From NCBI GenBank assembly GCA_000388065.2, contig KB932204.1: a stretch of DNA of 64,000 nt, one strand, 5' to 3'. The DNA comes from Fonticula alba ATCC 38817 (taxonomy: Eukaryota; Protista; Nucleariida). The number at the start of each line of letters is the position of its first letter. Position 1 is the stretch's first letter. Position numbers and translations under genes: made by a program. Below the pieces are notes generated by a model. It was not told the DNA's origin. It made no database searches and saw only the letters and a program-made list of their open reading frames with translations. Of this stretch, positions 20,209-43,584 are shown in pieces.

Positions 20209-20421
20209 GACCGCCTCACCGCCGTTGTACAAAAAGGGTACCAGGAAGCTGGCGAGAGAGCGAGAGAGAGAGAGAGAGAGGAAGGGAGGGGGGGGGGGCG
20301 GACTAAGATTCCCCCCTTTGTTGATGTTCATGTCCCCAATGTCCTCCTGTCCCTCCCTCCCGGCTGCCCGTGTCACAGTGCTCCGGCGTGCGTGTGTGGG
20401 TGTGCGCGTGTCACAGGGAGT

Positions 20422-20475
20422 CCCTCCCTCTTGGGATCTTGTATCCGCCCCTCCCTCTTGGGATCTTGTATCCGC
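20422..20475. repeat. 27-bp perfect tandem duplication between convergent genes
   Basis: CCCTCCCTCTTGGGATCTTGTATCCGC occurs twice in tandem. Confidence 0.85.
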
Positions 20476-20892
20476 CCCTCCCCCTTCCCCTGTCACTCCT
20501 GTGCCTCTCCATTTCCCCCCTCGTGGGCGCGCATGTCTCCTCTCCCTTCCACCCTGTGGCCGATTTGCCCGTTGTGGCATGCCTCTTCCCCGTCCCCTTC
20601 TCTCGTCCATCCTTCCTGTAGACACCCCCGGCCCCGGATGGGCCCCTCATAAAATACATTTATATATTAGATTATCCCCTCCTTTCGTCGGGAATTTGCC
20701 TTTGACAACTTTATCTTCATGGAAGAGGCTGGATCGGAGACCGCGCTGGCAGCCACGCGTTTATGTGTAGGATTGCGTGGGGGGAGGGCTCCGGGGAGGG
20801 GGAGGGGGGGGGGAGGGGCGCCATGGTCGGCCAAGAGGGTGTGTCAAAGGGAGGCAAGTCGAAAGGACGATGGAATGCGCAGAGCTGGCCAG

Positions 20893-21286
20893 TTATGCAT
20901 TGTGTGGCGGTGGCACAGGTAGGTCGCGGAAGGTCGATGTCGGAGGCCCGGCATCCTGGCCCGCGGGCGGGGCCCCCGCCCCCGGGCCTGAGGGGTGGAG
21001 TTGGTGAGAGTGCTGGTGATGCGGCGTGCCCGCCGACTGCTGATAGGAATGCTGAGGCACTGGCTCCGACGGAGCAGGGTAGAGGCTGTGTTGGTCAATG
21101 AAGGCCTCCCGGCGGGGCTCCGGCGCCCCGGGGAAGGGCCCGGAGGCCGAATGGGAAGGCTGATGTTGGGATGAAGACGCGGGTGGCGGTTGATAGGCAT
21201 AGGGGTTGGTCGTCGGGCCTGGAGCAGTAGAGGTGGCGCCAGCGCCGGTCGAAGGTGCTTGCTGATGCTGCTGCTGTTGTTGGTGT

Positions 21287-21318
<32 letters not shown>

Positions 21319-24300
21319 GTGGTGGTGGTGTGGTTGTTGCTGCTGCTGGTGGTGGAACAGTGGCTGGGAGACAGGCGCCGATGCCCAGCTTGGAGGCTGG
21401 GCTTGAGCGGCGGCCGGGTAGAGGGCAGCCGGCTGGGTAGGTGGCGGGGCCCATGAGAGGTAGGCGGTGGTCGGTTGGCCGCCCGGTGCCGTGTGAGGCA
21501 TGGCCACCGGCAGGAAGGACGGTGCAACAAAAGATCCAGCAGCGAGACCGTGCGGGTAGACGACCGTCTGCGGTGGCTGCTGATATGTCTGGGGGTATTG
21601 TGGCTGCTGTGAGTGCTGCGGGGGTGGCCCCGAGGACGAGGGACCGGTGGCGGTGAAAGTGCCTGATTGGGGCATTTCGGAGGCCGTGGTCAGATAGGTG
21701 GCCGATGGTCCAGCGTGAGCGGTGGCCGAAATGGCAGCCGCATGCTCTTTGATGGCAGCCACCTCCTGGTGGAGCTTCAGCTGCGTCTTACGTAGCCGAC
21801 GGCGAGTGAGCTCCAGCTCCCGACGGAGCTGTTCGTTGACGGTCTCCAAATGCTGAACATGGCCCACAGGGATTAGTACCTGATCGAGAGAGAGAGAGAG
21901 AGAGAGAAGGCAGGCGCAAGCGGCGGTGAAGAAAGAAGCCCGGGGTAAACGCACATGAACCTCGACGCGAGATTGCTGCAGAGCCTGCTCGACGGCGGCG
22001 GCCACCGCGCCAGCATGGCGCTCCTTGTCATTGTTGATCACCGCCGAGGCGACCAATTCCACCCGCGCAGCACGAACTACTTGCATTTCCAGGCCGGCAA
22101 TCTGGCGGCGCATTTCGGCCACGCGTGACTCGAGGGCCAAGTTCGCCTGGGTCAGTTGGGTGAGACGCTCATCGCGCGCGGCCTCGGAGAGATGTGCATG
22201 GGCGGGATCCCCCCCGGGAATGAGAGCCCGGCCGCCCCGAGGCGCCAAGGCACCAGGCCCGGCTAACCCCTGGCGTAGGGTGTCGCACAAATCAACCTGC
22301 ACACGCAAGCGCTTGTTCAGGTCACTGGCGCGCGCGCGCGCGTGTGTGTATGTGTGTGTGTGTGGTGCATGTATGCACGGAAGAGGGGGAGGAGGCGGAA
22401 TGTTGGTTAGGCGCCGCACCGGCAGGGATAGGGGAAGGGACGCTAGACACGCACGCTATTTCGTGCCGCATGCCGGCACACTCCTGCATGGCCGCATGGC
22501 GCTCATGGTCTAGATAGGCGTATGCCTGCTGCCAAGCGGCACGTTCCTGTTCCCAGGCCTGGCGACCAGCACGCAGGGTCTCCAATTCGGCGCGCTCGGA
22601 GAGCGAGCGCTCCAAATGGCTCCGGGCCAGTCGAATGATCCCGGCCGCGAAGAGGGTAAGCTCATGCGGCGGGAACTTGTACAGCTCCGAGGGGTTAAAG
22701 CTCATCAGGAAGGAGTCCGACACGCGGGAATCCACCAGGTGGTGGTGGTGCTGGGCCGAGGGGTCCAAGTGATCCGGCTGATAGTAGGGCTGCTGCTGGG
22801 CCGGGGGACGCTGACTTGCGGCACCGGCTTGCGGATCGGGCGACACCTGCCGGCCGACTGAGGACACGGCACTGGCCAGGGTGGCGACATTGCTACCGGC
22901 CAGCGCCGCCAGCTGGGCCACCTGCTCCTCCAGACACATGCCCGGGCTGGAGGGCATCGCCTGTTGAGGGGCCACAGGCTGGGCATCGGCCTGCCGGGGG
23001 CCAGCCTGCCCGGCTGGCTGCTGCGAGGGGGGCAGAGAGGTGGTTGGGAGATCGGTCGGCTGGGTGGCATTGTCGAACATCGACAAAACCCGCCGAGCCT
23101 GGGCCTCGAGCGCGTGCCAAGAGGGGTCATCCTCCAGAAGGCTCGACCGTTGTGACGAAGACCGGGAGAGATCTTGAACATGGAGGCCGGACGTGCTGCC
23201 ATGAACGTTACTGCTGCTGCTGCTGTTGTTGCTGCTGTTCCTTGGGTTGGCATTGGCCGAGCGCCCGGTGTCGCTGCCGCCGCCGCCGCCGTCGCCGCCG
23301 CCGCCGCGGCCCCCGCTGTCGACTCGCCCGCTGTTGACGTTGTGCCGGGCCGCTGGTAGAGCAAGGCCCGAGGCCGAGGGTGATTTCGCCGCCCGCGGCG
23401 AGTCAGAGTCGCTGGTAGAGCGCGATGCCTCTGACGAGCTGGGCGGCGTCAAGTCACCAGGCCGCCCGGTGGCCAGCGGAGACCGGACTCCTCGGGGTGA
23501 GCCGGGATGCGAGGTCGCATGGGCAGGCTTGGAGCCGGCCGACGCTCCGGCGGCGCTGCCACGCGATGCCTCCAGCGCCAAGCGCCGAGCCTCCGGGCTG
23601 GAAAAGGGATCCAGCCCCACAGCATGGAGTCCGGCCAGGTCGCGCAGTTCGCTGACCAACCGATCTAAAGATGACATGTCGCTATGGCGCTTGATAGCCA
23701 AGCGGGAAAGCTGGATTCACCCAAAGAGAGTGGGGTCAGGAGGCTGCCGGTGGTCAAAGGGAAAGGGGTGCCGGAGGCAACGTACAGCCTGTGCCTGGGT
23801 GGATGGCCGGAGGGTGGCCCCAAGACTCGGAGGCGTGCCCGGGACCGCAGCAGCGGACAAGGCGCAGGCGGAGGACGATGCATCCGGCGGGGCCACCTCG
23901 AAGAGGCCAGCCAGTCGGTCGGAATGCCCTTTGAGGCCGGCACTCCGGGTCGGGTCCAGGGGGTCCCGGCCGCCAGCGCCCATCGAATGGGTCGCCGGCA
24001 GGGTGCTGACATTGCCACGCCGGGCCGACAACTCAAGAAGGGTCCTCAGGAGGTCACTGTCGGCAGCCGACGGGGTCGTCTCAGCTCCAAGCGTCGAAGT
24101 GGCGAGGTTGTTGCCGTTGACGGAGGCAGACGAGCCAGGGGGCTTGCCAGTGCTGTGAGTGCCGCCAGCACCGTCAGTGGCGCCAGTGTTGCCAGTGCCA
24201 CCGGCCTGGGCCTTGCGACTGTGGGCAGGGTGCTCTGCAGATTGGAGGGGGTCTTGTTTGCCCTCCAGCTCATCTTCCGGCAGGATGTCGTCGATGTCCC

Positions 24301-24391
24301 GCAAAACTTGGGACATGGTCAGCCGGCCGATCCCCGGCAGGAGCGACTCCAGGAGATCCTCGTCAAGGAGGTCTTCCGCAAGTTGCTGCGC

Positions 24392-24437
<46 letters not shown>

Positions 24438-26017
24438 GACCGCTGCGATGGTTGTTGGTTCTGCCACGATTTGGTTTTGGGCGCCATCGTGTCAAATGGG
24501 ACGGCACTTGGCACGCGCCCGGACGGGACTCGAGTACCAGGGTCGAGGGTGCCGGGCCCGCTAAAGAGGCTGGCCGGAAGGAGTGTGCCCGGCGTGGGGG
24601 AAAACTCGAAGGGAGTCTCGGCCGGAAGCATTGGCACAAAGGTGGGAAGGGATGGGGGCGACGCAAAGCTGCCCGGGGCGCTGGGGTTTGGGGCCGTGTC
24701 GGTCGGAGTCCAACGTTCGGTGGTGGTGGTGGTGGTGGTGGTGGCGGCGGCGGTGGCGGCGGTGGTGGTGGCCGATCGAGTCGGATGCGCATCCACTAGG
24801 GATCTCGCCTGTGGAGAGAAGGGAGCCGAGGCCGCGGCCGAGGATGCCGGCGAGGGGGAGGTCGAGGGCGATGAGTGGGCCGAAGGAGCGGCGGCGCGAA
24901 AGACAGCCGCATGGGCGGGTGGCTCGATGCCGGCGGTTGGGCCAGCCGCCATCCCAGGCGAGTAGGCCCCTCGAGTGAGAAGAGAGGAGAAGGGCCCGGA
25001 AGTGGAGAGGGGCTGCTCGCCCAGCGGCGGCCGGGGCTTCAGCTCCAATGGAATGCCCCCTGGGGAGGGGACAGAGCTGGAGGTCCACTCGGCCAGATAG
25101 CCCGCATGAAGGGGATCTTCCGGGTGGGCAGCTGCCGGGAGCTTGGATGGCGGTGTGGCCGAGCCAGCGGCCGCGACGGTGACCGCGCTCAATCCATCTG
25201 GGCTGCCTGACGCCCGAGAGGACGACAGCTCCCGGTATCGGGCCAGGAAATCTTCCAGAGCCGGAGCCCCGGCGGCAATCGGAGTGCTGGTAGAGGCGAT
25301 GGCGAATGGGGTGCCGGTAGAGACGGCGCCGGTCGGGGCGCCCGCGCCAAGACCACTGGGCGAGAGGCCAGCTGGAGACCGAGGAAGCGGGAGTGTGGCA
25401 GCCGAGCTGCTGGCCATTGGAGCGGCCTCCCCCCATGCGGGCGCAGAGAAAAGCCCCCCCGAGGAAGAGGATGACGAGGAGGCAACGCCAGAAACAACGC
25501 CCGCGGGCTTCAAGCACGCAGGCGGGTGTGGCGGATGAATGTGAGGTCGGGTCCAGAGAAAGGAAGAGCTGTGTGTGTGTGTGTGTGTGCGTGTGTATCG
25601 ATGAATTCGTTGCATACCGAGGGTGTGGACGGATACAGGGAGGGCTTCGCGGTTGAAGCCCCACGAGAGGCACTGTATGTGGCCGAGAAGACTGGCCGGA
25701 CATCCACGGTGGCCGCGCCGGGCGCAGGCCGGCGGTCATCAACATCCGAGTCGGAACTCACATCCTGGATGGAAAAGATATCAGCCGGAGACTGGCCAGG
25801 CTGGGACGCGTATGTGCCAATGGGAGCAGGCACATGCGCAGGCGCGCGTGTAAATAGAGGGACAGCCGAGGAGCGAGAGGGTGGATGCGTGTGCATTCAT
25901 ATGCCCCCCCGAGAGCAAGTGCGTGCTGCGAGGCGCTTGGCGCGAACGCACCTTGTGGGCCGGGGACAAGTAGAAGGCCGGGCCGCTGCCAACAATCGGC
26001 GATGGCGTGGAAGACAT
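20893..26017 (-). CDS. Hypothetical ~1500-aa low-complexity protein with polyQ/polyT tracts and C-terminal coiled coil; multi-exon
   Basis: Long frames 23717-25615, 22322-23701 and 20893-22419 join at consensus GTACGT/GTGCGT donors and AG acceptors. The probable first exon is MSSTPSPIVGSGPAFYLSPAHK at 26017. Heptad-like segments: ERAELETLRAGRQAWEQERAAWQQ, ERLTQLTQANLALESRVAEMRRQIAGLEMQ, LETVNEQLRRELELTRRRLRKTQLKL. No family recognised. Confidence 0.7.
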
Positions 26018-27433
26018 CTTCCCCAGTGGGGGATTGCGCGCACGCGTGTGTGTGTGTGTGTGTGTCTAGCTGGGTGTGTGCGTGGGTGTGGTGTGCGTGG
26101 GGGAAGGGGGGGAGGGGAGCTAAGGGGCGAGCAGGGAACAAGGACCGCGCCAGTGCATGCCACCTGGGGGTGAGAGGCAAAGGAAGGGAGTGCCAAGAAG
26201 GCCGAAAGGGCAAATGACCAGCAGGCAGAGGAGAGGACCAAGATGGGAGGAGATATATGGGGGGGGGGGAGGGAAAGAGGAGGAGTGTGAATCGCCCCGC
26301 GCTCGTGGCCACCCGGAAAAAGGCGCCGAAAAAGTGCACAGGGACATGCCGATCGCCGATCTGCACACGGGTNNNNNNNNNNNNNNNNNNNNNNNNNNNN
26401 NNNNNNNNNNNNNNNNNNNNNNNTGGTTTTTGCAGCGGAGGCTCTTGCCCGGTGTTTTTTTTTTTTCCCCCCCCCCCCCCCCCCCCCCCCCCGCCACTCC
26501 GACAACCAAGTTCAAGCGCAGGGACCGGGAGGGCTTTGGCCCCCAGTCGACGCTCGCCGCTGGGGTCGGCGCGTCGGCCAGGGAGCACCATCTTGTTGCC
26601 TGGCCGATTGCTCAAGGCCAGGCCCATTTTTGTTGAGCAAGTGTTAATTTGTCCTCGGCCCCCGCACTCCCACAGCTGGGATGTCCGTTGCACTGCCGAA
26701 CGCGCCCAGTCGTTTGCATGTGGGCGCGCACGCACCCGAGCAACTTTGCTGCGCAGCCGGCACGCGAGACGAGCGCCGGTGGGCGCATGTGGGGCGAGCC
26801 GAGGGAGGGGGCGGCGGGCGCGGATGAGGAGTCACCGAAGAAGGAAGACAAGCCGCCGCGCCAGGCAGAACCATTTGACACCCTCAATCCTTAGACGTTA
26901 GCCTGTCGGTCATGTGATGTTCGTTGGCAGCATCGGGTGCTCCATGATTGGTCCAAAACATGGCACGAGAAGAGAGAGGCGGAGGGAGAGGAAGAGGGAG
27001 AGAGAGAGAGAGAGAGCAGCCCCAGCCGCGAAGGAGGCAAGGCGGGGGGACCCAGGAAGGAGACAGACACACGCGGGGGGGGGGGGGGGGGGTCAAAATG
27101 CGGACGCATATATTTAGGGGAGGAGATACGGCACACCGGGGGAGGAAGAGGAGAGCCGGCCGACCGCAGTCCGGGAAAGGGGATCGTTTTTTTTTTGGCA
27201 ACAAGGACAGATGTGGGAGGGTGATGAGGAAAGGTCTAGCGCAGGGAAGAGGGGCGGGCAGGCCTGCGGGCAGCTCTACTTGCTTGCCGAGAGGCCCAGC
27301 CGCCGGCATGACGCTGTAATGTGTGGGTGGGTGGGTGGGCGGGTGTGTACGGGAGGGAAAAAGAGACAGGAGGGGGAAAGGAGGAGCCCTGCCGGGCACC
27401 GGCGGGAGCGTGGAGGCAACGCCGGGAGCACTC

Positions 27434-30400
27434 TTAAGAGGAAGGCGGACCCGGCGGGGTCTTGGCCGGCCCGTCGCCAGAAGCCGCGCCCGTCTCGGCC
27501 GGCGTTTCTTGCGGGAAGGAAGCAGCCTGAGGAGGCGAGGCATCGGGATGCTGCTGCTGCTGCTGCTGCTGCTGCTCCTCGCCCTCGGGCTCCCGAGCCG
27601 AGTCGGAGAAGTTGGGCAACGTCGAGTGCATGGAGGCCGCCACGTCAGATGCACTGCCTTCCTGCGGGGCGGAGGCGTCAGGCTGGTCCACTTGAGCAGC
27701 ATGCGCAGTGAAGCGAGTATTCTGTTGGAGCCAGTGACGGGAGGTCTTCGGCTGCGATGGGGGGGACACGCTCGAGGCGCCGGAAGTCGGCCTCGCGCTC
27801 GGGTCCTGACTGAAGTTCGGAATGAGGAACGGGCTCTTGGGGGCATTGGCGTTCGCCGGGGCCTCGGTCGGGCTGTCAGCCCGGGAGAAGGAGCTGCCCG
27901 AGGAGAGGGAGCTACGCATGCGGATGCCCTCGCTGCGGCTGAGAGCCTGGGCCGCCATGTCGGCCGCCGCGCGCAGATAGGCATCCTGAGCCATGCGCTT
28001 GGAGGCGGCGGTCTGGGCCTCGAGGCTTTGGCGGACGATGCGCGAGAGATTCGGCGAGAGAATGGTGGAATCCATCTCGTCGATGCGCTGCTTGCGCGCC
28101 AGAGCCACGCACACCTGGGTGGCCGGATGCATGCCGCAGTACAGACAGAGGCCGAGGCTTTCGCGGCGACTGCGCTCGTCGTGCGAGGGAACGTGCTTGC
28201 GCTCGACCGGGTCCCACAAGATGCCCCGGTGGGCCAGGTAGGGACAAGGGTCGGAGGAGATTTCATGGAGCCCACAATACGGGCACAGGCGCAGGCGCCG
28301 ACGCTCATTGGCCAGGGCCAGCGATACCCGGTGATGGCCGAGGAGGAAATCGAAGCCACCCTTGCGGATGATGCCGGAGCAGGGCTCCGACGCCGGGTGC
28401 AGGCCACAGAACCGACACAGCCGGTGCTCGCGCCGGCGTTCATATTCCTCCTGGGTGACCTGGTACCGGCCCAGGGAATTGAAAGTCAGCTTGCCGGTGG
28501 CCAGCAGCAGGGGACACGCCTGGGTGAGGGGATGCTCGCCGCAATACCGGCATAGGTCCGCCTGCTCCTCGGTCCAATCATCGGACACCGGATGGGCCAG
28601 CGCCTTGCCGAGGGGAAGCAGCTCGCCCCGGCGACCGAGCGACATGCGCTGGACCCAGGGCTGCGGACAGGGCTCGGTGGCCGGGTGCTGGCCACAGGCG
28701 GCGCAAAGCCCCGACCGCAGGCGCATGGTCTTGGTGGCTTCACTCAGGTGGTAACGGCCACCGGCATAGTGGTAGCCCAGGCGCAGGAGAACCATGCACA
28801 GCTCATCGGCCTCGTGCAGGCCGCACACACCGCAGGGGACCATGATTTCGCGCAGGGTCACCTCATGACGCAAGGTGGCCGAAGACTGGTCCGGCAGGAC
28901 GGTCGAGCGCTCTTGCAGCAGGGAGGCCACCGAGCTGAAGAGATTCACCGCAGCCAGGATGGAGGTGCTCTGGCGGGGGAGCTTGGGAAGTTGCTCGTCC
29001 ACGGTCTGGCGGAAGAGATTAACCAGGGCCTCCACCGATTGGAGGACATCCGGTTCGGCGACCGCCGGCAGGGGAGAATCCCCCGAGGGGGGATGCTGGT
29101 GCGCATGCCGGTGCTGGCCATCGTCCCCAGCCTCCGGGTGATTGCACTGGGCATGGTCATGGTGGGCGGCGTGGGGCGGATTGCCATCGGCATTGGAGGC
29201 GATCTCCGACAGGATCGGAGACCAGGCGGCCGCGTGCCCTGGCGGCAGGGGCCGAGCCGGCGGGGTCGTCTGGCCAATGGCCGCCACCATCAAGTTCGTC
29301 AGGGCCTTGGCCGCCACGGCGAGCGACACCTCCACCGAGGGGAGATGCCCACTGGGGGTCAGGGCGGCGGCCGTGCCGATGGCCTCGCGTTGGCGGGCAT
29401 CCTGCAGGTCGGCCTTGACCGAGCCAAGGTCCGGCCAGCCCAGAGCCGGGCCAGTGGAAGGAACATACGACCCGCCACGACGCTCTTCCGATCTCTGGCC
29501 AATGGCCGCCACCATCAAGTTCGTCAGGGCCTTGGCCGCCACGGCGAGCGACACCTCCACCGAGGGGAGATGCCCACTGGGGGTCAGGGCGGCGGCCGTG
29601 CCGATGGCCTCGCGTTGGCGGGCATCCTGCAGGTCGGCCTTGACCGAGCCAAGGTCCGGCCAGCCCAGAGCCGGGCCAGTGGAAGGAACATACGACCCGC
29701 CGGCCAGATCCAGCCCGCGGGCAAGCTTCAATGGGCAGGCTAGCCCATGGGGATGGCCATGGCAGTCGGGGCAGCGGGGAAACCGGTCCACCGGGGCACT
29801 GACATCGTGGCCGGTTTGCGCGCGGTAGCCACGCAGGCACCACCAGTCAACCACCGGGCAGATGGTTGCCCCGTGCGGCGGGGCGCCGCAAAAGACACAC
29901 AATTGCGCCCGCGACCGGCGAAGGTACTCGGCCCCGGTGACATTGGTGGCCAGCAGCCCCATCAAGGCGTCCAGGTAGAGGAGCGTCTGCCGGGCGTCGT
30001 GGGGCCCGGGGGTGGAAGAACCAGCGGCGGCCGGCTGCAGGAGCGACACCAGCTGCGACAGGGTGCTGGAGGTGGGATTGGCGGTCAGCTTGGCGAGGGC
30101 CTCGGCTCCCAGGGGATCCGGGCCGGTGGGATTGGCCGGCGGGGCGGGCATGAAAACCGGCACCGAGGCCGGGCCGGGACCGGGGCCGGGGCCCGGTCTG
30201 GACGGCTTCAGCGATTGTAAAAGGGGATTGGTGGCGGCGATGCGCCCGAGGACCCCGGTCAGGAGGTGCTCATCGCGCCGGGCCTGCCGGGGCATGGTGG
30301 TGGGGGAAACCATGCGCACGCCGGCCGGGCCGGGAGCGGGAGCCGGGGCATTGGCCGCCTCGGCCAGGACCGCGGCCGTGGGCGCCGTGCGTGGATGCCC

Positions 30401-31075
30401 CATGAACTCGGCCTGGAGGGCGGCAAATTGCGGATGGATGTCCGGCGCCTCGAAGGGAAGCAGTTCCGGGTTCGGGTCATCCTGCCGGAAGGGCAGAACC
30501 CGGACCGAGCGCCGAGGGGACCGGCTCGGCCGGCTTGCGGCCCGAGTGCGATCCTCCTCCGGCTCGGTCGAGGGGGTGGCCGTCGGGGGGTCGGATGAGG
30601 CAGCGGTGGTGGTGGTGGTGGCGGTGGCGGCGGCAGCGGCGGCCGTATGGTCGCTCGGAGGCAGGGGCGGCGGATGCGGGGTGTCCGTGGCCGAGGTGGA
30701 GTAAAAGGCCCCCGGGCGCCGGCCATGGGTGGCCGGGGCGGGGAACCGGCCACGCGGCGGCCCGGCCCCGATCAGCGAGTCATAGCCGACCGGGCGCCGG
30801 ACCGGATATCGCGAAGCACCAGTGCCGGGGCCGCTCTGCACCAGTGACACCCCGACTGCGGCGAGGGCCGGCGCGGCCACGAGCGTCGAGGCGGCCAGGA
30901 CCACGCGCAGGCGCCCGGCCGCCAGGTGGGGCGGCCCAAGCGAAAGCCCACGTTCTCCCAAAGCCGGCAGCAGGGCCGCCGGCAGTCGATCGATCGACCC
31001 GGCCATGGCGGCCGGGGCGACTCGCGGTGCCCGGGGACTGGCGCGACCCGGGGCGACAGGGGCTCCTCGCGACAT
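27434..31075 (-). CDS. Unspliced 1213-aa ORF (about 1138 aa without the artefactual duplication) with eight CCHC zinc-knuckle-like motifs; Ty3/gypsy Gag-nucleocapsid-like
   Basis: Single open frame of 3.6 kb. Canonical CX2CX4HX4C (CVFCGAPPHGATIC, ~29858-29899), then CPDCHGHPHGLAC, then six CX2CGXHX5-6C repeats spaced 43-51 aa apart (28109-28834). The true 5' end may lie upstream across the gap at ~31.1-31.3 kb. Confidence 0.8.
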   Translation of the reverse strand: MSRGAPVAPGRASPRAPRVAPAAMAGSIDRLPAALLPALGERGLSLGPPHLAAGRLRVVLAASTLVAAPALAAVGVSLVQSGPGTGASRYPVRRPVGYDSLIGAGPPRGRFPAPATHGRRPGAFYSTSATDTPHPPPLPPSDHTAAAAAATATTTTTAASSDPPTATPSTEPEEDRTRAASRPSRSPRRSVRVLPFRQDDPNPELLPFEAPDIHPQFAALQAEFMGHPRTAPTAAVLAEAANAPAPAPGPAGVRMVSPTTMPRQARRDEHLLTGVLGRIAATNPLLQSLKPSRPGPGPGPGPASVPVFMPAPPANPTGPDPLGAEALAKLTANPTSSTLSQLVSLLQPAAAGSSTPGPHDARQTLLYLDALMGLLATNVTGAEYLRRSRAQLCVFCGAPPHGATICPVVDWWCLRGYRAQTGHDVSAPVDRFPRCPDCHGHPHGLACPLKLARGLDLAGGSYVPSTGPALGWPDLGSVKADLQDARQREAIGTAAALTPSGHLPSVEVSLAVAAKALTNLMVAAIGQRSEERRGGSYVPSTGPALGWPDLGSVKADLQDARQREAIGTAAALTPSGHLPSVEVSLAVAAKALTNLMVAAIGQTTPPARPLPPGHAAAWSPILSEIASNADGNPPHAAHHDHAQCNHPEAGDDGQHRHAHQHPPSGDSPLPAVAEPDVLQSVEALVNLFRQTVDEQLPKLPRQSTSILAAVNLFSSVASLLQERSTVLPDQSSATLRHEVTLREIMVPCGVCGLHEADELCMVLLRLGYHYAGGRYHLSEATKTMRLRSGLCAACGQHPATEPCPQPWVQRMSLGRRGELLPLGKALAHPVSDDWTEEQADLCRYCGEHPLTQACPLLLATGKLTFNSLGRYQVTQEEYERRREHRLCRFCGLHPASEPCSGIIRKGGFDFLLGHHRVSLALANERRRLRLCPYCGLHEISSDPCPYLAHRGILWDPVERKHVPSHDERSRRESLGLCLYCGMHPATQVCVALARKQRIDEMDSTILSPNLSRIVRQSLEAQTAASKRMAQDAYLRAAADMAAQALSRSEGIRMRSSLSSGSSFSRADSPTEAPANANAPKSPFLIPNFSQDPSARPTSGASSVSPPSQPKTSRHWLQQNTRFTAHAAQVDQPDASAPQEGSASDVAASMHSTLPNFSDSAREPEGEEQQQQQQQQHPDASPPQAASFPQETPAETGAASGDGPAKTPPGPPSS
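29270..29701. repeat. Perfect 207-bp direct duplication (29270-29476 / 29495-29701) joined by Illumina adapter sequence
   Basis: The two copies are identical. The junction 29476-29494 reads CACGACGCTCTTCCGATCT, the 3' 19 nt of the Illumina read-1 primer/adapter (ACACTCTTTCCCTACACGACGCTCTTCCGATCT). Confidence 0.92.
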
Positions 31076-33074
31076 TGAGCCAGGACAAAGAGGGGGTTGG
31101 GGTCCGGGTTGGGGCGGGGCGGGGGGNNNNNNNNNNNNNNNNNNNNNNNNNNNNNNNNNNNNNNNNNNNNNNNNNNNNNNNNNNNNNNNNNNNNNNNNNN
31201 NNNNNNNNNNNNNNNNNNNNNNNNNNNNNNNNNNNNNNNNNNNNNNNNNNNNNNNNNNNNNNNNNNNNNNNNNNNNNNNGGGGGGAGAGACAGGGGAGGG
31301 CAGAGGAGGAGAGAGGACGAAGACGCGCGGTCTTCCGGACGGCGGCGGCGGCAGCAGTGAGCGGGGCCCGAGCCAGCTGCGTCGACTGGGCGCCGAGGGG
31401 CGTGAAGAAGTCTACAAGGCGCGGCTCGCGGATGCTCGGGACTGCGAGGGTGGGAGGACGCGGTGGTCAGCAATCGACCTCGACAAAAAGCAGCATGAGG
31501 AGGGACGGGATACGGGGCGAGTGCGGGGAAGGGCGGAGCGCACTCGCAGCGACGGCGGCCCACACGGAGGCGCGGAGTCCGGAAATGGAAGAAGAGGAGA
31601 GGGGGGGGAATCCAGGACAGCTGACGAGCAAAGGTCTCTCCAGAGAGGAACAGGGACGGGGCAAAAGGAGGGCGAACGGGAGAGGGTGAATGGGGATGGG
31701 GGGGGGGGGGAGGGGAGGGAGGAGACCTGTGCAAGGGGCTTCGGACGTGCCGGCCTGTGCACCGGGGGCCGTTCAGTCGCCCCGGTAGCCAGCCCAGAGG
31801 AGCATGTTCGGCAGGACCCCCCCCCCCCCCCCCCCCCCCCCGTCAGCCGGAAGAAGCGGCACTCCGGGCAGAGGGGCGCCGCGGAACCGGCCGTGCCCGC
31901 ACGGCGGCCAGCGTGCCTCTAAAGTGCAGCCAGGTCAGGGCGTGGGGCACGGACAACATGTGTGCCTGCCCCCCCCCCCCCCCCCCCCCCCGGAGGCGCG
32001 TGCCGGCCAGCCCCCTCTCTGGTGCTGCCTCGCGGGGGCCCCGGGACCGAGTCGAGAAGGCAAATGTTGGGGGCCGGTGGGCATCTGACTCTTCAGAATG
32101 CGGGAGCAGGGTTTATCTTGACTTGCATTGGGAACTCGAGTTCGTTCATGAGTCACAGTTTGAATCGCACCTAAACCCATGCTGGAGAGCGGGGGCCGGG
32201 CCGCCGGCCTCAAGATGAACACCCAACTGATCATCACCGCCCTCGGTTAAGCCAGAGCGAGGAAGGCGATCAAGGATGCGCCAGGGTGTCCTGCGTTGGT
32301 ATTTCGCCGGCATGTGATAGGCGGAACGGTATTTTGTCCTGAGCGTGAGGGATTTGCGAGGGATTTGGCCCGCCCGCCGAAAAAGGGAGGCGATGGGCGG
32401 TGAACATTCTGAAGGCCACTTCTCGGCCCCGCCCCCCGCGGCCGTGGGGGGCGCGCGTGTGGGGGCGGCTGCCGGCATCTGATGGCGTGAGGGCGGGGAC
32501 CTTTCGCCCCCTGTCCTCTCTCTCTCTCTCTCTCTCCCTCTCTGCATGCTTATGTATGCGCCCCCGCGGGAGGCGTTCCATTTTTCTCTCCCGGGGCCAA
32601 GCCCCCTCCGCTGGTGCGCGCGGTGTGGGGGCGCCGCGGGGCCGGGGGCCGGGGGCGGGGGGCGGGGGGTGCCAGTCGTCTCTGCACGCAGGAGCACCGC
32701 GGAAGGCAGGCCTCGGGCCCAAAGGGCGGAAAAGGAGTCATACTTTATTCGGGACACATTTGCACCGATGCCCGGGCCGAAAAAAAGAGGGCCCGGTGGC
32801 CGGCTATCTCGGCTTGGCCCTTTGGTGGTCCTGCTGCAACCGGACGGGTCCTCTCTGCCAGGTGGTGCGGTGGCGCGCCGATTGCGCTTGTGCTTCCAAC
32901 GGAGCGCGCCTCGGGCCGGCGGGGGGCAGGGTCCGGGCCGGAGGGACTTGTGAAAGTCTGCCCGAGGGGCCGGGGCGGCCAAATGCCAAGGGCGTAGGCG
33001 CGATGCGCCCGCGCGATGGCCAGGTTGTTCTCCACCCAGGCCCACGCCCAGGGCTGCGGCCGGCCCTCCGTGAC

Positions 33075-33112
<38 letters not shown>

Positions 33113-34300
33113 CCGTGGACTTCTGGTCTCCCTTTCTCCATCTCTCGTCCTCGGGCTCTTTCCGTGCATTCCCGCCGGTCCCTTGGTCCATCTCTCTTCA
33201 CCCCCGGTTGGAGGATTCCCAGCCACGGCAGGGATGCCGGGAAGTGCGCCCCAGCAAGGCGTCGACAAGGGAGGGGCGGAAAAGGAAGAAAAAGACGCCG
33301 CCAACAGCACTCGCTCCCTGCCCTGTGGGCAGGGTGCCCTGCCCTTCGGGTCGCCCTGGGCGCCAAAACCCGGCGCTCCTCCATTGGCAGGGGACTTTGC
33401 CCGGCCCCGGGTCCCCTGCCTTCACGGCCCCTCCCTCGGGAGTTGATTTCTCTCCCTCGCCGCTGGGGCTCCGCGGCAAGGTGGTTACTGTTGCGCGCGA
33501 GTCTCTTTTTTTCGCCCCCCCCCTCTCGCCCCAGCCCCTCGTCGAGCATGTCGATCACACATTGGCCTGAGATTGTGTGCCGGTCCTCCCCCACTTGCCT
33601 GGGGCCAAGTGTCCATGATGCTCCCCGGGCTCGGGACCGGGGCCGCCCCGTGTGAGGCCCAGCTTCGGGGGGGGGGAGCCCCGGCCCAGCCGGCCCGGCG
33701 CTCGGGCCGGTGCTCGCCACGCGCAGGGGGCTCGCGATCTGGCAGGCCGCGCGGCTCCCTGCCAGAGACCTGCTGGCAGGGCGCCCCCGCCCCCGGAACG
33801 AGCGACACCCCGGACCGCGCTTTTGCTTTCGCCATCGGCCTTGGCCGGCCATACTTGTTTCACTTTTCTCTCGTCGGGGGCCTCGTTGGGCCAGGATCTA
33901 TTCCCCCCTCCAGCGGCCCGCCCCCCTCCGGCTCCTGCCCCGCGCGTCTTGCGGGTCCCGTCACACAATGTCGCCCGCCTTCCGGCCATTCCGAGCGGAA
34001 GCAGCATCTGCCCTCGGTCGTCCGCGCACCGGCGAATTCAAGGGCGAGATCCATATCCACCGGCCGCACGCTGGCCTCCCCGCCACAGCCAACGCCCTTC
34101 TTCCCCCCTCCCGCGCCCCATCACCCTCCTCCCCCCTCCCCCCTGATCTCCCTCCCTGCTAGTCCCCTTCGGAAGCCTTCTCCTGTCTGTCCCTTCCACC
34201 GCGTCAGTGCCGTTCTCCCGTTTTCTCCCCCCGCGTCCGGCCGGCCCTCCCCTCCGCACTCCCCACCCCCTTCCTTTCTCCTGCCCCCATTCATCCAGGC

Positions 34301-34783
34301 ATGGGCTACGACGGGTCCTCTGCCCAGGCGAGCCCGGCTGTGCCGGCAGCCACCCCGCCCTTGCACCCCCCGATGCTGGGAGATGGCGACACTTCCATTT
34401 CCTTGAACGAGCAAATGTACACCGCTCTGTCGATGCCGGTGTCGCCGAGCCAGGCCGATGTCTCCTCGCCGGCAGTGCCCCCCGACACCGCCATCCCGGC
34501 GGCCCGCTCCGGCGCCGCCCCGGCTGGCGACGCGCCTCCCGCTCGCAAGCGCGAGGCCGTTGTCGATGTACGCTCCATCTTCACCGGCTTATTTCTTCTC
34601 TCTCTCTCTCTCTCTCGCTCCCTCCGTTCCTCCGCCTCTTTTCCCGTGTCGGGCTCCCATCGCCCATCGCCCATCGCCCATCGCCCATCGCCCATCNNNN
34701 NNNNNNCGTGCTTCCTCGGCTCTTCAACCTCAAATGTGCCGATGGGGTTGGACATCTTCCTCCGTCCACCTATCTCCGTATGC

Positions 34784-34818
<35 letters not shown>

Positions 34819-37396
34819 CGGGCGGCATTGTCAATTGTTACTCCACAGTCCATGCCGACCGGCCGACCTTCTATACCGAGCGCCAAGACGGCCTTTATCG
34901 GCTGTTCCCCTTCTACATGGCACGTATCTTGGCTGATCTGCCCTTCGACATCGGTTTCTCCTTGCTGTACTCGATCCCGATCTACCTGCTGGCCGGGTTG
35001 GATCTGGAGGTGGATAAGGTGCGTGCCTGGTCTCCTGCACCGGAGTCCCCCGGGCGCCTGTATGTGTGTGTGTGTGCTTGTGTGCTTGTGTGCATGCGCA
35101 CGCCAAATCAGCGTGCTCTCCCTCGCCCCCTCTCCCCCCCCCCCCGTGCACTCACCAAAATCCATGCCTTTCACTACGCGCAAAGATGGTCGAAGAGGAG
35201 CCGGTCTTCCAGCCCAGCTCTCGCTCCGTGCGCATCGACGTGCGAAACCTCAACTACATCGTGCAGCCCGGGCTGGACCTGGACGCGCAGGCCATCGGGG
35301 CGGTGTTGACTCGCGGTCGCCGCGGCATGCCGACCCCGCGCAAGCTCCTGGACGACGTTTCCATGACGGTCCTGCCGGGGGAATTGTGCGCCGTCATCGG
35401 GTCCTCCGGATCGGGCAAGACCACGCTGCTGGATGTGATCGCCGCGCGGCATCAATCCGGCGGCGGGATGTTCGCCGGGAGCTCGCTATCCGGCGATGTC
35501 CTGCTGAATGGACTGCCCCGGACGACGGCCCGGATTCGAGCCGTCGGCGGGTATGTGGCCCAGGAGGACCGTCTCCCGGCCGAGCTGACCGTGCGCGAGG
35601 TCCTGTCCTTTGTGGCACGCATTCGCATGTCGCGCGACATGCGCGACGAGGAGAAGCTCCGCCGGGCGGATGCGGTGGCCGCCGAATTGGGGCTCATCCA
35701 TGTGGCGCACACGCCGATCGGCGGGTCGGCCACCGTGCGCGGTGTGTCTGGAGGCGAGCGTCGGCGTGTGTCCATTGGCACGCAATTGCTCCTGGACCCG
35801 GCGGTGCTCTTCGCCGATGAGCCGACCTCCGGGCTAGATGCATACACCGCACGGCATGTGGTGTCCACTCTGCGTGGCTTGGCCCGAGCCGGGCGCACCG
35901 TTCTCTGCACCATCCATGCCCCGCGGGCCGATGTCTTCCGGATGTTCGACAAGGTGATGATCCTGTCCCAGGGCCAGGTGGTGTACTTCGGGGCAGTCGA
36001 GCGGGTGGTGGACTACTTCTCCAAGGCCGGGCATCCGTGCCCCATCTACAGCAATCCCTGCGATTATTACCGTACGTGGTGCCCTTGTCATGCTTCCGCG
36101 GCCTCTTTGTGGCCTCTCTCTCTCTCTCCTTTTGTGGGCCTCCCTCCTTCTCTTTCCCCTGCTGCTCCTGGCCTCGCCTGGCCACCTGTGCATGGACTTA
36201 TGCTTTTTCTTTCATCCCCCCCCCCTCCCTCCCTCCCTCCGTCTGTCGCCCCGCTCCCCATGCCCGATGCCCCTCTGGTGCCGGTAGTCGACTTGTCCAC
36301 AGTGGACTTCCGCTCGGAGCGCCGGGAGCGCACCTCCCGCGCGGTGGTCAAGAAGCTGGTGGATTACTACCGGGCCAACACCAAGTTCGCCACCGGGCAC
36401 CTGCCCGAGGAGGATCCCCTGCATCAGCAATCCCGCGCAGATGCCAAGCTCCGGTTGATCCAGGCCTCGGAGCAGGATGCCAGCGTGGCGGCCGACAATG
36501 CGGCCCTGGCATCGGCCTCCGACGGCAGCAAGGGCAGGTCTCTCTTCTCGCGGCGCAAGTCCGCGGCCGCCGGCGATGGTGGGGACATCCCGATGGCCGA
36601 CCTTTCGCCCTCGCTTGAGGACACCTCCCCGGCCAAGGTCCTTGGTGGGTCGGAGGAGGACTTCCGCGCGGTGACCGGGGCCTCGGTTCTCGAGCAGTTC
36701 CGTCTGCTGTATCTGCGTTCCGTGATGTTCCGCTTCAAGGTATGTTTGGTTTTGACGTCCCGCGGCCGGCCGGCTGCCGGCTGTCTGCCTGGGGGGGGGG
36801 GGAGGGTCATGCTGCTCGATGCACTTGTCCACGCATGCGCACACACGCACGCACGCACACACGCACGCGCCCGGTCACATTCAACCACTCGACCTGCTGA
36901 CCTTTCCCGACACAACACACTGCCCCTGTTTGTGACACGCGCGCACATGCCCTCTTTCTTTCCCTCTGTCTCCCTCTCCCTCTCTCTCCCTCGCCGCCCT
37001 CTTATCCATCGCACACAAATGCGCAGGCTCGCTCGGCGCTGTTGACCGAGTTTGGCCAGACGCTGGCCATGGGCCTGGCCGTGGGTGTGGTCTTCTATGC
37101 CCTTGGCAGTGACCAGGTATCTGTGCAGGATCGCTTCGGCTTGTGCTACATCGTGTCGACCCTCTTCCCGTTCATGGTCATCCTGAGCACGGTGGCGAAG
37201 TGTGCGTTTAGATTGTGCCCATTGTGCCGGGGCTCCCCTGTCTCTCCCATTCAAACACCCTCCTTTGCCCCTCTTTCTCCCCCTCTCTCACACGATTTTC
37301 CCCTCGCGCTTGCTTTTGGCGTGCTTCCTCGGCTCTTCAACCTCAAATGTGCCGATGGGGTTGGACATCTTCCTCCGTCCACCTATCTCCGTATGC

Positions 37397-37429
<33 letters not shown>

Positions 37430-38513
37430 CGGGCGGCATTGTCAATTGTTACTCCACAGTCCATGCCGACCGGCCGACCTTCTATACCGAGCGCCAAGAC
37501 GGCCTTTATCGGCTGTTCCCCTTCTACATGGCACGTATCTTGGCTGATCTGCCCTTCGACATCGGTTTCTCCTTGCTGTACTCGATCCCGATCTACCTGC
37601 TGGCCGGGTTGGATCTGGAGGTGGATAAGGTGCGTGCCTGGTCTCCTGCACCGGAGTCCCCCGGGCGCCTGTATGTGTGTGTGTGTGCTTGTGTGCTTGT
37701 GTGCATGCGCACGCCAAATCAGCGTGCTCTCCCTCGCCCCCTCTCCCCCCCCCCCAGGTGGTTCTTCTAGATTCACTTTCTCGGCCAGCCTGAAAGCCTG
37801 ACATCGCGAGCTCTCCCCCTTTCGCTCCCCCCCCCCCCCCTCACCCACTCACCCCCGAGGTCAGTTCTTTGCCTTCCAAATTGTGATTTTCCTCTGTATC
37901 TACGCCAGTCGGTCGATTGCCGTCGGTGTGGCCTCCATGGTCCCGCGCTTCCAGCAGGCCTCCTTCGTGGCGAATTTCCTCTTCACCATGTTCCTTCTTC
38001 CCTGCGGGTATGTCATGCATTCCTCTCGTTGGATGGCAAAGCAGCCGAGCCGCCTGATCTCCACGCCTTCCCCTGCCCGTGTGGTGGCGAGACACACACC
38101 ATTGACATGATGCATCCCCCTCTCCTCGTCCCTTCGCAGGTTCATCTTCAACATGGACACCGTCTGGATTGGGATTCGCTGGCTCAGCAACATCTCCTTC
38201 GTCACGTTCACCTTCCAGGCTCTGTCGGTCAATGAGTTCCGTGACCAATCCTTCGATTGCCCAGCCCCACCGGTTGGCAGCATGGACGGCCAACTGCCGC
38301 CTGGCTTCGAGTCTCTGACGCCGGAGCAATTGGCACAGTACGCTTCTGGCGAGTTGACTTCCTGCCCCATCCCGGATGGCGAGTCGGCCCTGGAGTTGTA
38401 CGCCATGAGCAGCGTCAATGTCCTGCACAATGGCATCTTCCTGGTTGCGGTGACCGTCTTCTTCCGGACTCTCTGTTTCCTTGCCCTCAAGTACATCAGC
38501 CAGCGGCCGCGGT
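34301..38513 (+). CDS. ABC transporter subfamily G half transporter (NBD-TMD), ABCG5/ABCG8-like; multi-exon
   Basis: Walker A GSSGSGKTTLLD, Q-loop GYVAQED, signature VSGGERRRVSIG, Walker B LFADEPTSGLD and H-loop CTIHAP in exon 35186-~36070. TMD exons follow: FHADRPTFYTERQDGLY, ASFVANFLFTMFLLPCG, WIRWLSNISFVTFTFQALSVNEF. Ends LKYISQRPR*. Confidence 0.92.
34707..35145 (+). repeat. ~440-bp duplicate of 37320-37755 (intron-exon-intron of the ABCG TMD) placed directly after a 10-N gap
   Basis: Near-identical sequence including microsatellites. The duplicated TMD exon does not fit at this position, upstream of the NBD. Confidence 0.9.
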
Positions 38514-38740
38514 AATCCCCTCTCCTTTCTGCCGGGCCAAGCCCCGATGTCCATGTGCGCGCGTGTGTCGGCCATATGGGCGGGAGTTTGCAATGCGCCG
38601 CACGCAGGGGACCAGGCATGCTTCTCCTGCGGCTGTGGATTTCCAAATGTGCGCCTGAGCATGTGCGCGTGCATCCATCGTATACCCCTCAGTCGCCCAC
38701 ACTTGCACGCACCGGGCCCCTGAAGGCGGTGTATGGATCT

Positions 38741-40738: not shown

Positions 40739-43584
<2,846 letters not shown>

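What the first reader, a model, noticed from the sequence alone, without database searches (positions are those of the whole stretch)
27434..31075. Stand-alone gene with an amplified array of Ty3/gypsy Gag-like zinc knuckles: candidate domesticated retroelement protein
Seen: a 3.6-kb unspliced frame among genes whose exons are mostly much shorter. It has one canonical retroviral CX2CX4HX4C knuckle, one CPDCHGHPHGLAC, and six tandem ~43-51-aa modules built on L-CX2C-G-X-H-X5-6-C. Established, recalled from memory and to be verified: the linker-plus-knuckle pattern VTQEEYERRREHRLCRFCG / HDERSRRESLGLCLYCG / EYLRRSRAQLCVFCG closely mirrors the nucleocapsid of Ty3/gypsy-derived Gag such as PEG10 (LTQEEKERRRKLNLCLYCG..GH...CP). 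Seen: no protease, RT, integrase or LTR nearby. Inference: a Gag nucleocapsid module was captured, shortened by two residues in the C-to-H loop and multiplied into a multivalent nucleic-acid-binding array, possibly for RNA binding or transposon defence.
Basis: partly seen in the sequence, partly recalled or inferred. Interest (0 to 1): 0.8.

Follow-up and report, generated by a model that had tools for sequence, protein, structure and literature searches.

The report
Gag-derived zinc-knuckle array gene, Fonticula
A single-exon gene of the slime-mould-like amoeba Fonticula alba encodes a long, mostly disordered protein carrying eight zinc-knuckle modules that are homologous to the nucleic-acid-binding tail of a retrotransposon coat protein (Ty3/gypsy Gag). 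It is one of three such host genes, so it looks like a piece of a mobile element taken over and multiplied by the host.

Summary
Window 27434-31075 (-) is a 1213-aa ORF, identical to a public single-exon gene call in Fonticula alba (GCA_000388065.2). No Pfam zinc-knuckle model, solved structure or fold search recognises the module.

A profile of the six arrayed modules, searched against 1.84 billion proteins, found only two other F. alba proteins as array-bearing relatives: H696_05279 with 10 modules and H696_00495 with 4. It also hit the Gag of a Ty3/gypsy retrotransposon whose single C-terminal knuckle has the same short spacing and the same Arg-rich linker. A second related Gag shares these features. 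Profile-profile comparison of the modules with these two Gags gives 97.5% probability, E 5e-12.

No capsid domain, protease, RT, integrase or LTR is present at any of the three loci. All 80 ligand positions in 20 modules are intact, while the remaining positions are about 21% identical.

Best reading: an old nucleocapsid-only exaptation, amplified into multivalent zinc-dependent RNA/ssDNA-binding arrays. The short spacing probably predates capture. Function, expression and orthologues remain untested.

The parts
27434..31075 (-). Whole single-exon gene, 1213 codons plus stop. Fonticula alba hypothetical protein (P0001).
   Evidence: ORF list. Exact match to a public gene call. GC3 0.81 against GC2 0.58 all along the frame.
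29936..31075 (-). N-terminal about 380 residues. Ala/Pro/Ser/Arg-rich low-complexity region with no recognisable domain. The first 28 residues are basic with no acidic residue.
   Evidence: Pfam finds nothing. Composition.
29858..29899 (-). Knuckle K1, residues 393-406. The only motif with canonical CX2CX4HX4C spacing, preceded by an Arg-rich linker and Leu.
   Evidence: Weak sub-threshold Pfam DUF7815 match at residues 384-398.
29735..29773 (-). Knuckle K2, residues 435-447. In register it is a seventh short-spacing module (CX2C-X2-H-X5-C).
   Evidence: Its tail aligns with module tails of H696_00495.
29269..29701 (-). Perfect in-frame tandem duplication, 225-bp unit, 1.9 copies, 100% identical. 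It starts just after K2, at about residues 459-602.
   Evidence: Tandem Repeats Finder. The repeat finder family D7.
28046..28870 (-). Array of six modules M1-M6, residues 736-1010. Each is about 43-51 aa: Arg-rich helix, knuckle CX2CGXHX5-6C, short helix.
   Evidence: Profile search. AlphaFold model of M4 with mean pLDDT 82.
28796..28834 (-). Knuckle M1, residues 748-760
28667..28705 (-). Knuckle M2, residues 791-803
28514..28552 (-). Knuckle M3, residues 842-854
28379..28417 (-). Knuckle M4, residues 887-899. The module modelled with AlphaFold.
28244..28285 (-). Knuckle M5, residues 931-944. The only one with X6 between His and the last Cys.
28109..28147 (-). Knuckle M6, residues 977-989
27434..28045 (-). 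C-terminal about 200-residue Ser/Ala/Pro/Gln-rich tail with a poly-Gln run, plus the stop codon.
   Evidence: TGC/CAG run 27549-27576. No Pfam hit.
31127..31279 (.). Assembly gap (153 N) lying 52 nt upstream of the start codon. The reading frame is open up to it.

Best explanation
The ORF is a real host gene of Fonticula alba. It belongs to a three-gene, apparently lineage-restricted family, together with H696_05279 and H696_00495. Its only recognisable content is a tandem array of a roughly 45-residue module.

Each module has three parts: an Arg-rich alpha-helix, a CCHC zinc knuckle with unusual spacing (Cys-X2-Cys-Gly-X-His-X5-Cys), and a short helix.

The module descends from the C-terminal linker plus nucleocapsid knuckle of the Gag protein of a clade of Ty3/gypsy LTR retrotransposons that already carry the short spacing. 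Only this nucleocapsid piece was kept. There is no capsid, protease, RT, integrase or LTR. The piece was multiplied to 8, 10 and 4 copies in the three genes and has since diverged almost to saturation, except at the four metal ligands.

Inferred mechanism: each module binds one zinc ion through the four invariant residues. With its basic helix and the aromatic residue often found before the second Cys, it contacts single-stranded nucleic acid. The array, strung on disordered linkers, then acts as a multivalent RNA or ssDNA binder or chaperone.

Shown here: the gene, the motifs, the paralogues, the homology to Gag nucleocapsid, the lack of other retroelement parts, and ligand conservation. Inferred: zinc binding, nucleic-acid binding, and the biological role.
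For: Coding gene:
- Exact public gene call.
- GC3 0.81 against GC2 0.58 throughout.

Motifs:
-. Chance expectation is about 0.0009.

Family:
- The six-module profile, searched against 1.84e9 proteins, found self (7 stretches), H696_05279 (E 2e-45, 10 stretches) and H696_00495 (E 1e-20, 4 stretches). These lie on three different scaffolds among ordinary genes.
- BLASTP shows homology only in the arrays, at 32-33% identity.

Constraint:
- In 20 modules the four ligands are 20/20 each, Arg at -6 is 18/20, Leu at -1 is 15/20, and Gly after Cys2 is 17/20.
- Non-ligand identity is 21-22%.
- All 12 Cys of H696_00495, 30 of 35 in H696_05279 and 24 of 26 in the window protein lie in knuckles.

Gag link:
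- P0010 (E 4.9e-5) is the ORF directly upstream of a pol with RVT_1, RNase H, Integrase_H2C2, rve and SH3_Tf2-1.
- That pol's best solved relative is Ty3 Gag-Pol 7q5b, E 5e-129.
- P0010's single knuckle has the same CX2CGXHX5C spacing.
- A second Gag (L027, 50% identical) has CX2CGXHX7C with the same linker.
- hhalign of the modules against these Gags gives 97.5% probability, E 4.9e-12, over 41 columns at Gag residues 339-379.
- The profile's linker and first half also match a fish array of canonical knuckles that Pfam calls zf-CCHC.

Fold:
- AlphaFold of one module with the 20-module alignment gives pLDDT about 90 over residues 1-30, showing helix, knuckle with a beta-bridge, then helix.

No other retroelement parts:
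-.
Against: - Only two retrotransposon Gags with the short spacing were found. Their host organisms are unknown, and no such element was looked for in the F. alba genome, because no tool searches it.
- No curated zinc-knuckle model, solved structure or fold search recognises the module, so zinc and nucleic-acid binding rest on analogy.
- His only two residues after Cys2 is an untested geometry for a Gag-type knuckle.
- No orthologue outside F. alba was found, so purifying selection could be judged only from ligand conservation among paralogous modules.
- No expression data were available.
- The assembly is gapped, and one internal duplication may be an artefact.
Confidence: 0.62

Rival explanations
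1. A cellular zinc-finger family unrelated to Gag. On this reading the likeness to the two Gag tails is convergence on a short Cys/His motif with a basic linker, or those two retrotransposons picked the motif up from a host gene.
For: - No Pfam zf-CCHC or Gag model hits any module.
- The best PDB sequence match of the profile is a PHD-type finger of PHF7 with the same CX2CGXH...C letters, E 0.027.
- Only two Gags share the short spacing. Other relatives of that pol have canonical knuckles (3 loci) or no knuckle-like motif in the upstream sequence held.
Against: - The match covers 41 columns, including the helix before and the stretch after the knuckle, not only the ligands.
- The profile's linker and first half also match canonical Gag-type knuckles (P0005).
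- The module sits at the C-terminal end of the gag ORF, immediately upstream of pol, where a nucleocapsid knuckle is expected.
- The PHF7 hit is not significant.
Confidence: 0.13
2. The modules are Gag-derived zinc knuckles, but they serve protein-protein contacts or scaffolding, for example in a condensate or a ubiquitin-type complex, rather than nucleic-acid binding.
For: - Most of the protein is low-complexity and predicted disordered.
- The altered spacing and the loss of the Gly-His pair of canonical knuckles could have changed the binding surface.
- The structural searches gave only weak RING or zinc-ribbon look-alikes.
Against: - The Arg-rich helix (Arg at -6 in 18/20) and the aromatic residue before Cys2 (11/20) are kept. 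This fits nucleic-acid contact, by analogy with nucleocapsid proteins (established knowledge, not tested here).
- The fold-search hits are all non-significant.
Confidence: 0.15
3. A decaying retroelement remnant, or an over-called ORF in a GC-rich genome, with no function.
For: - GC-rich DNA gives many long spurious ORFs here.
- There are no orthologues and no expression data.
- An assembly gap lies beside the start codon and a perfect internal duplication is present.
Against: - The 1213-codon frame has a strong GC3 signal.
- All 80 ligand positions are intact in 20 modules that are otherwise about 21% identical.
- There are three unlinked intact genes, one of them with an intron.
- No pol or LTR remnants.
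Confidence: 0.05

Closest known systems
Nucleocapsid (C-terminal linker plus CCHC knuckle) of Ty3/gypsy (Metaviridae) Gag, specifically the clade represented by P0010 (locus L002) and the gag ORF of L027
   Same: - Arg-rich linker, Leu before Cys1, aromatic residue before Cys2, Gly after Cys2, His two residues later.
- A similar stretch after the last Cys.
- Profile-profile probability 97.5%.
   Different: - The F. alba proteins have 4-10 copies in tandem, against one copy at the end of Gag.
- They have no capsid domain and no pol downstream.
- They are host genes at three unlinked loci.
   Same: - Four ligands in the order Cys, Cys, His, Cys, with a CX2C start followed by Gly.
- One of the eight motifs (K1) has the canonical X4/X4 spacing.
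   Different: - Seven of the eight motifs have X2 then X5-6 spacing.
- No Pfam knuckle model hits them even at E up to 10.
- Neither PEG10 nor the Ty3 knuckle came back as a hit.
Cellular multi-knuckle RNA/ssDNA-binding proteins of the CNBP/Gis2 type (recalled from general knowledge, not returned by any search here)
   Same: Several CCHC knuckles in tandem in a host protein, thought to bind single-stranded nucleic acid multivalently.
   Different: - Those have canonical spacing, short linkers and small size.
- Here the modules are 43-51 aa with a helix on each side, the spacing is non-canonical, the proteins are 384-1213 aa with long disordered parts, and there is a traceable Gag relative.
Domesticated Gag genes of animals (Arc, PNMA, RTL/SIRH families; general knowledge)
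   Same: Retroelement gag sequence kept as a host gene without pol or LTRs.
   Different: - Those keep the capsid domain and often lose the knuckle.
- Here only the nucleocapsid piece is kept and amplified.
- The host is a nucleariid amoeba with a very repeat-poor genome, reported as 0.36% repetitive DNA.

Membership tests
Pfam zf-CCHC (PF00098) canonical zinc knuckle | Spacing CX2CX4HX4C | tested here: not met
   Met by K1 only (residues 393-406). The other seven motifs are CX2C-X2-H-X5/6-C.
Pfam zf-CCHC (PF00098) canonical zinc knuckle | Match to the family profile at or above its gathering score | tested here: not met
   No zf-CCHC family listed at E up to 10 for the whole protein, its pieces or single modules. 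One module reaches zf-CCHC_5 at E 0.77.
Ty3/gypsy Gag | C-terminal nucleocapsid linker plus knuckle homologous to that of bona fide Gag | tested here: met
   hmmsearch E 4.9e-5 to P0010 among 1.84e9 proteins. hhalign gives 97.5% probability, E 4.9e-12. P0010 lies upstream of a Ty3-like pol.
Ty3/gypsy Gag | Capsid (Retrotrans_gag-type) domain N-terminal to the knuckle | tested here: not met
   No Pfam hit. hhalign of the two Gags against the whole protein aligns only residues 863-907. A fold test was impossible because the model has pLDDT 41.
LTR retrotransposon (mobile element) | pol genes (protease, RT, RNase H, integrase) adjacent | tested here: not met
   No such domain in the long ORFs from 19 to 34 kb or in the called genes around the three loci.
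LTR retrotransposon (mobile element) | Flanking long terminal direct repeats | tested here: not met
   Only microsatellite-like repeat families around the gene. No direct repeats of 80 nt or more around the paralogues.
LTR retrotransposon (mobile element) | Many dispersed near-identical copies | tested here: inconclusive
   Only three diverged proteins in the protein library, and a paper reports the genome as 0.36% repeats. The F. alba DNA itself could not be searched.
Domesticated (exapted) retroelement gene | Sequence constraint after capture | tested here: met
   By proxy only. 80 of 80 ligand positions are intact while non-ligand identity is 21-22%. dN/dS against orthologues was not possible.
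Domesticated (exapted) retroelement gene | Orthologues at the same locus in related species | tested here: inconclusive
   No hit outside F. alba among 1.84e9 representatives. Whether other nucleariid proteomes are in that library is not known.
Domesticated (exapted) retroelement gene | Expression as a host gene | not testable with these tools
   No transcript or proteome data at hand.
PEG10 / RTL family | Comes back as a named relative in sequence or structure searches | tested here: not met
   No such hit.
CNBP-type cellular multi-knuckle proteins | Tandem canonical knuckles recognised by zf-CCHC models, with short linkers | tested here: not met
   No zf-CCHC hits. Module period is 43-51 aa.

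The most novel reading that the evidence does not exclude
The three F. alba genes could be a lineage-specific genome-defence or RNA-handling system built from nucleocapsid pieces alone. Multivalent arrays of Gag-type knuckles would bind retroelement RNA, or other single-stranded RNA, and so compete with or sequester it, in a genome that is nearly free of transposable elements. A side variant: two of the three proteins have presequence-like N-termini and might act on organellar RNA.
Probability: 0.12. Interest if true: 0.8.

Novelty: new variant of a known kind. Interest (0 to 1): 0.55.

Why it matters
Known host genes derived from gag keep the capsid part, as in Arc, PNMA and RTL. A host family that keeps only the nucleocapsid knuckle, in a non-canonical spacing that no curated model recognises, and multiplies it into arrays of 4-10, would be a different route of retroelement exaptation. 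It occurs in a deep-branching relative of fungi with almost no transposable elements.

It also documents a CCHC spacing variant (X2 then X5) shared by active-looking Ty3/gypsy Gags and host proteins, which annotation pipelines currently miss. All three genes are labelled 'hypothetical protein'.

Tried and rejected
1. Word-indexed homologue searches gave only the query itself or nothing: whole protein region 330-1000, the 275-aa array alone, and the Gag P0010. Low-complexity words probably swamped the candidate lists.
2. Pfam on the whole protein, five pieces and 20 single modules gave no significant family. The weak sub-threshold hits (DUF7815, CP12, New_glue) were judged to be noise.
3. PDB sequence searches with the protein and with the module profile gave nothing significant. 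The best was a PHF7 PHD finger at E 0.027.
4. Foldseek of the confident 45-residue module model against PDB and BFVD gave a best E of 8 and 1.7. The domain is too small for the method.
5. AlphaFold of residues 300-760 without an alignment gave mean pLDDT 41 and was not used for a fold search. The capsid-fold question therefore stays open at the structural level.
It was corrected by starting those rows one codon later.
7. A metagenome scan with the pol of L002 gave 24 related loci. Only the closest (L027) has the short spacing. Three have canonical knuckles and the rest show no knuckle-like motif in the upstream sequence held, which was too short in several loci.
8. Grouping of modules by gene was tested and not found (permutation p 0.66), so no order of duplication could be inferred.
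9. Literature searches for the spacing pattern, for F. alba zinc knuckles and for the sample identifiers found nothing relevant.
10. A Pfam call on the pol stretch of L027 failed because that stretch is not one open frame. This was not pursued.


Full report
**1. The observation**

The window is GC-rich (about 0.6-0.7) and holds a 1213-codon ORF at 27434-31075 on the minus strand. The same protein is the product of a one-exon gene call on scaffold KB932204.1 of assembly GCA_000388065.2. A preprint names that assembly as Fonticula alba, a nucleariid slime mould at the base of the fungal side of Opisthokonta.

GC at codon positions 1/2/3 is 0.72/0.58/0.81 in every 100-codon block. The other long ORFs compared have lower GC3, 0.65-0.75. 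The frame therefore looks truly coding.

The protein has 26 cysteines, and 24 of them lie in eight Cys-Cys-His-Cys motifs:
- One motif, at residues 393-406, has the canonical CX2CX4HX4C spacing.
- One motif lies at 435-447.
- Six motifs have first Cys at 748, 791, 842, 887, 931 and 977 and share CX2C-G-X-H-X5(6)-C.

From the protein's own Cys and His content, fewer than 0.001 such motifs are expected. None occurs in any other frame of the 64-kb window.

Aligned with the array, the motif at 435-447 is a seventh short-spacing module, and its tail resembles module tails.

**2. Surroundings**

The called neighbours are ordinary genes:
- an ABC transporter at 34301-38515 (+)
- ribosomal protein L34 at 39914-40448 (+)
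- Vps4, on the minus strand, held in L001 from 40739 to the locus end at 41075 (the gene runs beyond it)
- an unnamed 1100-aa gene ending at 20208 (+)

Ten long ORFs between 19 and 34 kb have no Pfam domain at all, so there is no protease, RT, RNase H or integrase. Repeat searches find only microsatellite-like families and no long direct repeats bracketing the gene.

Inside the ORF there is a perfect in-frame 225-bp tandem duplication at 29269-29701. A 153-N assembly gap lies 52 nt upstream of the ATG, and the frame is open up to it.

**3. What the module is not, by curated libraries**

- Pfam gives no zinc-knuckle or Gag family for the whole protein, for five pieces or for 20 single modules, even at E up to 10.
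- PDB sequence searches with the protein and with a 20-module profile give nothing significant. The best is a PHD-type finger of PHF7 at E 0.027.
Nor did the knuckle of Ty3 itself, although Ty3 Gag-Pol is in the PDB set (one search shows entry 7q5b).

**4. Relatives**

A profile of the six arrayed modules (alignment A1) was scored against 1.84 billion representative proteins. Ten proteins reached E 0.001:
- The query itself, with 7 stretches.
- P0002, F. alba H696_05279: 932 aa, 10 stretches, E 2e-45.
- P0003, F. alba H696_00495: 384 aa, 4 stretches, E 1e-20 (names).
- P0005, a fish protein made of eleven near-identical units, each with a canonical knuckle that Pfam calls zf-CCHC. It matches the linker and the first half of the profile.
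- P0010, a 417-aa protein, E 4.9e-5.
- A 49-aa fragment, a short double-zinc-ribbon protein, and three translated simple repeats.

The two F. alba paralogues lie on other scaffolds among ordinary genes, and again no pol is present. No LTR-like repeats flank them. One of them has an intron.

BLASTP shows that the three proteins are alike only in the arrays, at 32-33% identity. All 12 Cys of H696_00495 and 30 of 35 in H696_05279 lie in knuckles of the same short spacing.

**5. The link to Gag**

P0010 is the ORF directly upstream of a 1291-aa ORF on a 5.7-kb contig (L002). That downstream ORF has, in order:
- RVT_1
- RNase H
- Integrase_H2C2
- rve
- SH3_Tf2-1
- a weak chromodomain

Its best solved relative is Ty3 Gag-Pol, E 5e-129. 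P0010 is therefore the Gag of a Ty3/gypsy element.

Its only knuckle lies at the C-terminus and has exactly the spacing CX2CGXHX5C. It is preceded by an Arg-rich linker and Leu, and followed by a stretch like the module tails.

A metagenome scan with the pol found 24 related loci. The closest, L027, has a gag ORF 50% identical to P0010, with the same linker and CX2CGXH followed by X7-C. Three more distant loci have canonical knuckles. The others show no knuckle-like motif in the upstream sequence held, which was too short in several loci.

Profile-profile comparison of 20 F. alba modules (A4) with the two Gags (A5) gives 97.5% probability, E 4.9e-12, over 41 columns at Gag residues 339-379. 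The same two Gags compared with the whole window protein align only to one module, residues 863-907. Nothing aligns to their capsid part.

The pol stretch held in L027 is not one open frame. I did not examine it further.

**6. Constraint and history**

Across the 20 modules:
- The four ligands are present in 20 of 20.
- Arg six residues before Cys1: 18 of 20.
- Leu before Cys1: 15 of 20.
- Gly after Cys2: 17 of 20.
- Pro before the last Cys: 12 of 20, and Pro after it: 12 of 20.
- An aromatic residue before Cys2: 11 of 20.

Identity at non-ligand positions is 21% within genes and 22% between genes, with no grouping by gene (permutation p 0.66). The modules are therefore old and diverged close to saturation, yet every one of the 80 ligand positions is intact. 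That argues for selection on metal binding and against a decaying remnant.

The short spacing occurs in retrotransposon Gags. This is inference. The one canonical-spacing motif (K1) in the same protein is not explained by it.

**7. Structure**

AlphaFold2 of module M4 with the 20-module alignment gives mean pLDDT 82, about 90 over residues 1-30. The model shows a helix over the Arg-rich linker, a knuckle with a beta-bridge, then a short helix.

Foldseek against PDB and BFVD finds nothing significant for so small a domain. Residues 300-760, folded without an alignment, give pLDDT 41.

**8. Mechanism**

Shown here:
- A host gene family.
- Arrays of a Gag-nucleocapsid-derived module.
- Invariant Cys-Cys-His-Cys.
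- Absence of every other retroelement part.

Inferred from established knowledge of nucleocapsid and other CCHC knuckle proteins:
- Each module binds one zinc ion.
- With its basic helix and aromatic residue, each module contacts single-stranded nucleic acid.
- Eight modules on flexible linkers give multivalent, chaperone-like binding.

Which nucleic acid, and for what purpose, is unknown. A role against retroelements is attractive in a genome reported to be only 0.36% repeats, but nothing tests it. The N-termini of two of the three proteins are basic and nearly free of acidic residues. That could be a targeting presequence or merely GC-driven composition.

**9. Comparison, novelty, verdict**

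The module works like, and is homologous to, the Ty3/gypsy Gag nucleocapsid. The protein is not a Gag, because it has no capsid. It is not a retrotransposon, because it has no pol or LTR. It does not meet the profile or the spacing of Pfam zf-CCHC.

No paper in the searchable library describes the family or the spacing, and the three proteins are labelled hypothetical.

I rate it a new variant of a known kind: a domesticated retroelement gene and a zinc-knuckle protein. The unusual points are:
- nucleocapsid-only retention
- amplification into arrays
- a non-canonical spacing shared with a retrotransposon clade
- a deep-branching, repeat-poor host

Confidence in the identity is about 0.75. Confidence in the proposed nucleic-acid-binding mechanism is about 0.5. 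Interest is 0.55.

Conservation is given as shares by position. Break places in the L027 pol stretch were neither sought nor listed.

Noticed in passing
window 29269-29701: Perfect (100%) in-frame 225-bp tandem duplication, 1.9 copies, inside the ORF. It duplicates about 75 residues just after the second knuckle. It is either a very recent duplication or an assembly artefact in a gapped draft.
   Followed up: partly
window 31076-31279: An assembly gap of 153 N begins 52 nt upstream of the start codon, and the reading frame is open up to the gap. The annotated 5' end is therefore not certain. The intervening bases are pyrimidine-rich, like intergenic DNA here.
   Followed up: partly
window 34707-35085 and 37320-37696: Two 100% identical direct repeats, together about 380 nt, spaced about 2612 nt apart. 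They lie next to a 10-N gap (34697-34706) and inside the ABC-transporter gene call (34301-38515, +). This looks like an assembly duplication.
   Followed up: no
window 20209-27433: 7.2 kb with no called gene. It holds long minus-strand ORFs (20893-22419, 22322-23701, 23717-25615) rich in Ala/Ser/Pro/Gln with CAG/CTG runs. They have no Pfam hit and only a modest GC3 signal. This could be a missed low-complexity gene or just GC-rich open frames.
   Followed up: partly
window 30992-31075 (residues 1-28) and P0002 residues 1-62: The N-termini of the window protein and of H696_05279 are Arg/Ala/Ser-rich with no acidic residue in the first 28 and first 62 residues respectively. This is presequence-like. 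H696_00495 has an acidic N-terminus instead.
   Followed up: partly
P0005 (Anabas testudineus LOC113155357): A 1027-aa fish protein made of eleven near-identical tandem units of about 93 aa, each with a canonical Gag-type knuckle and an Arg-rich linker. It is another, evidently recent, tandem amplification of a nucleocapsid-like piece.
   Followed up: no
P0002 residues 539-553 (L003, about 11782-11826): H696_05279 has one odd unit with four Cys (CX2C, seven residues, CX2C) in place of a CCHC module, lying between the seventh and eighth modules.
   Followed up: no
L027 1229-2163: The pol stretch held in this metagenome contig, the closest relative of the L002 element, is not a single open frame when translated straight through. 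That copy may be degraded.
   Followed up: no
window-wide, e.g. 18472-18662, 26967-27019, 33059-33135: Intergenic regions are full of CT/GA and GT/CA microsatellite-like tracts. Twelve N gaps interrupt the 64-kb window.
   Followed up: no
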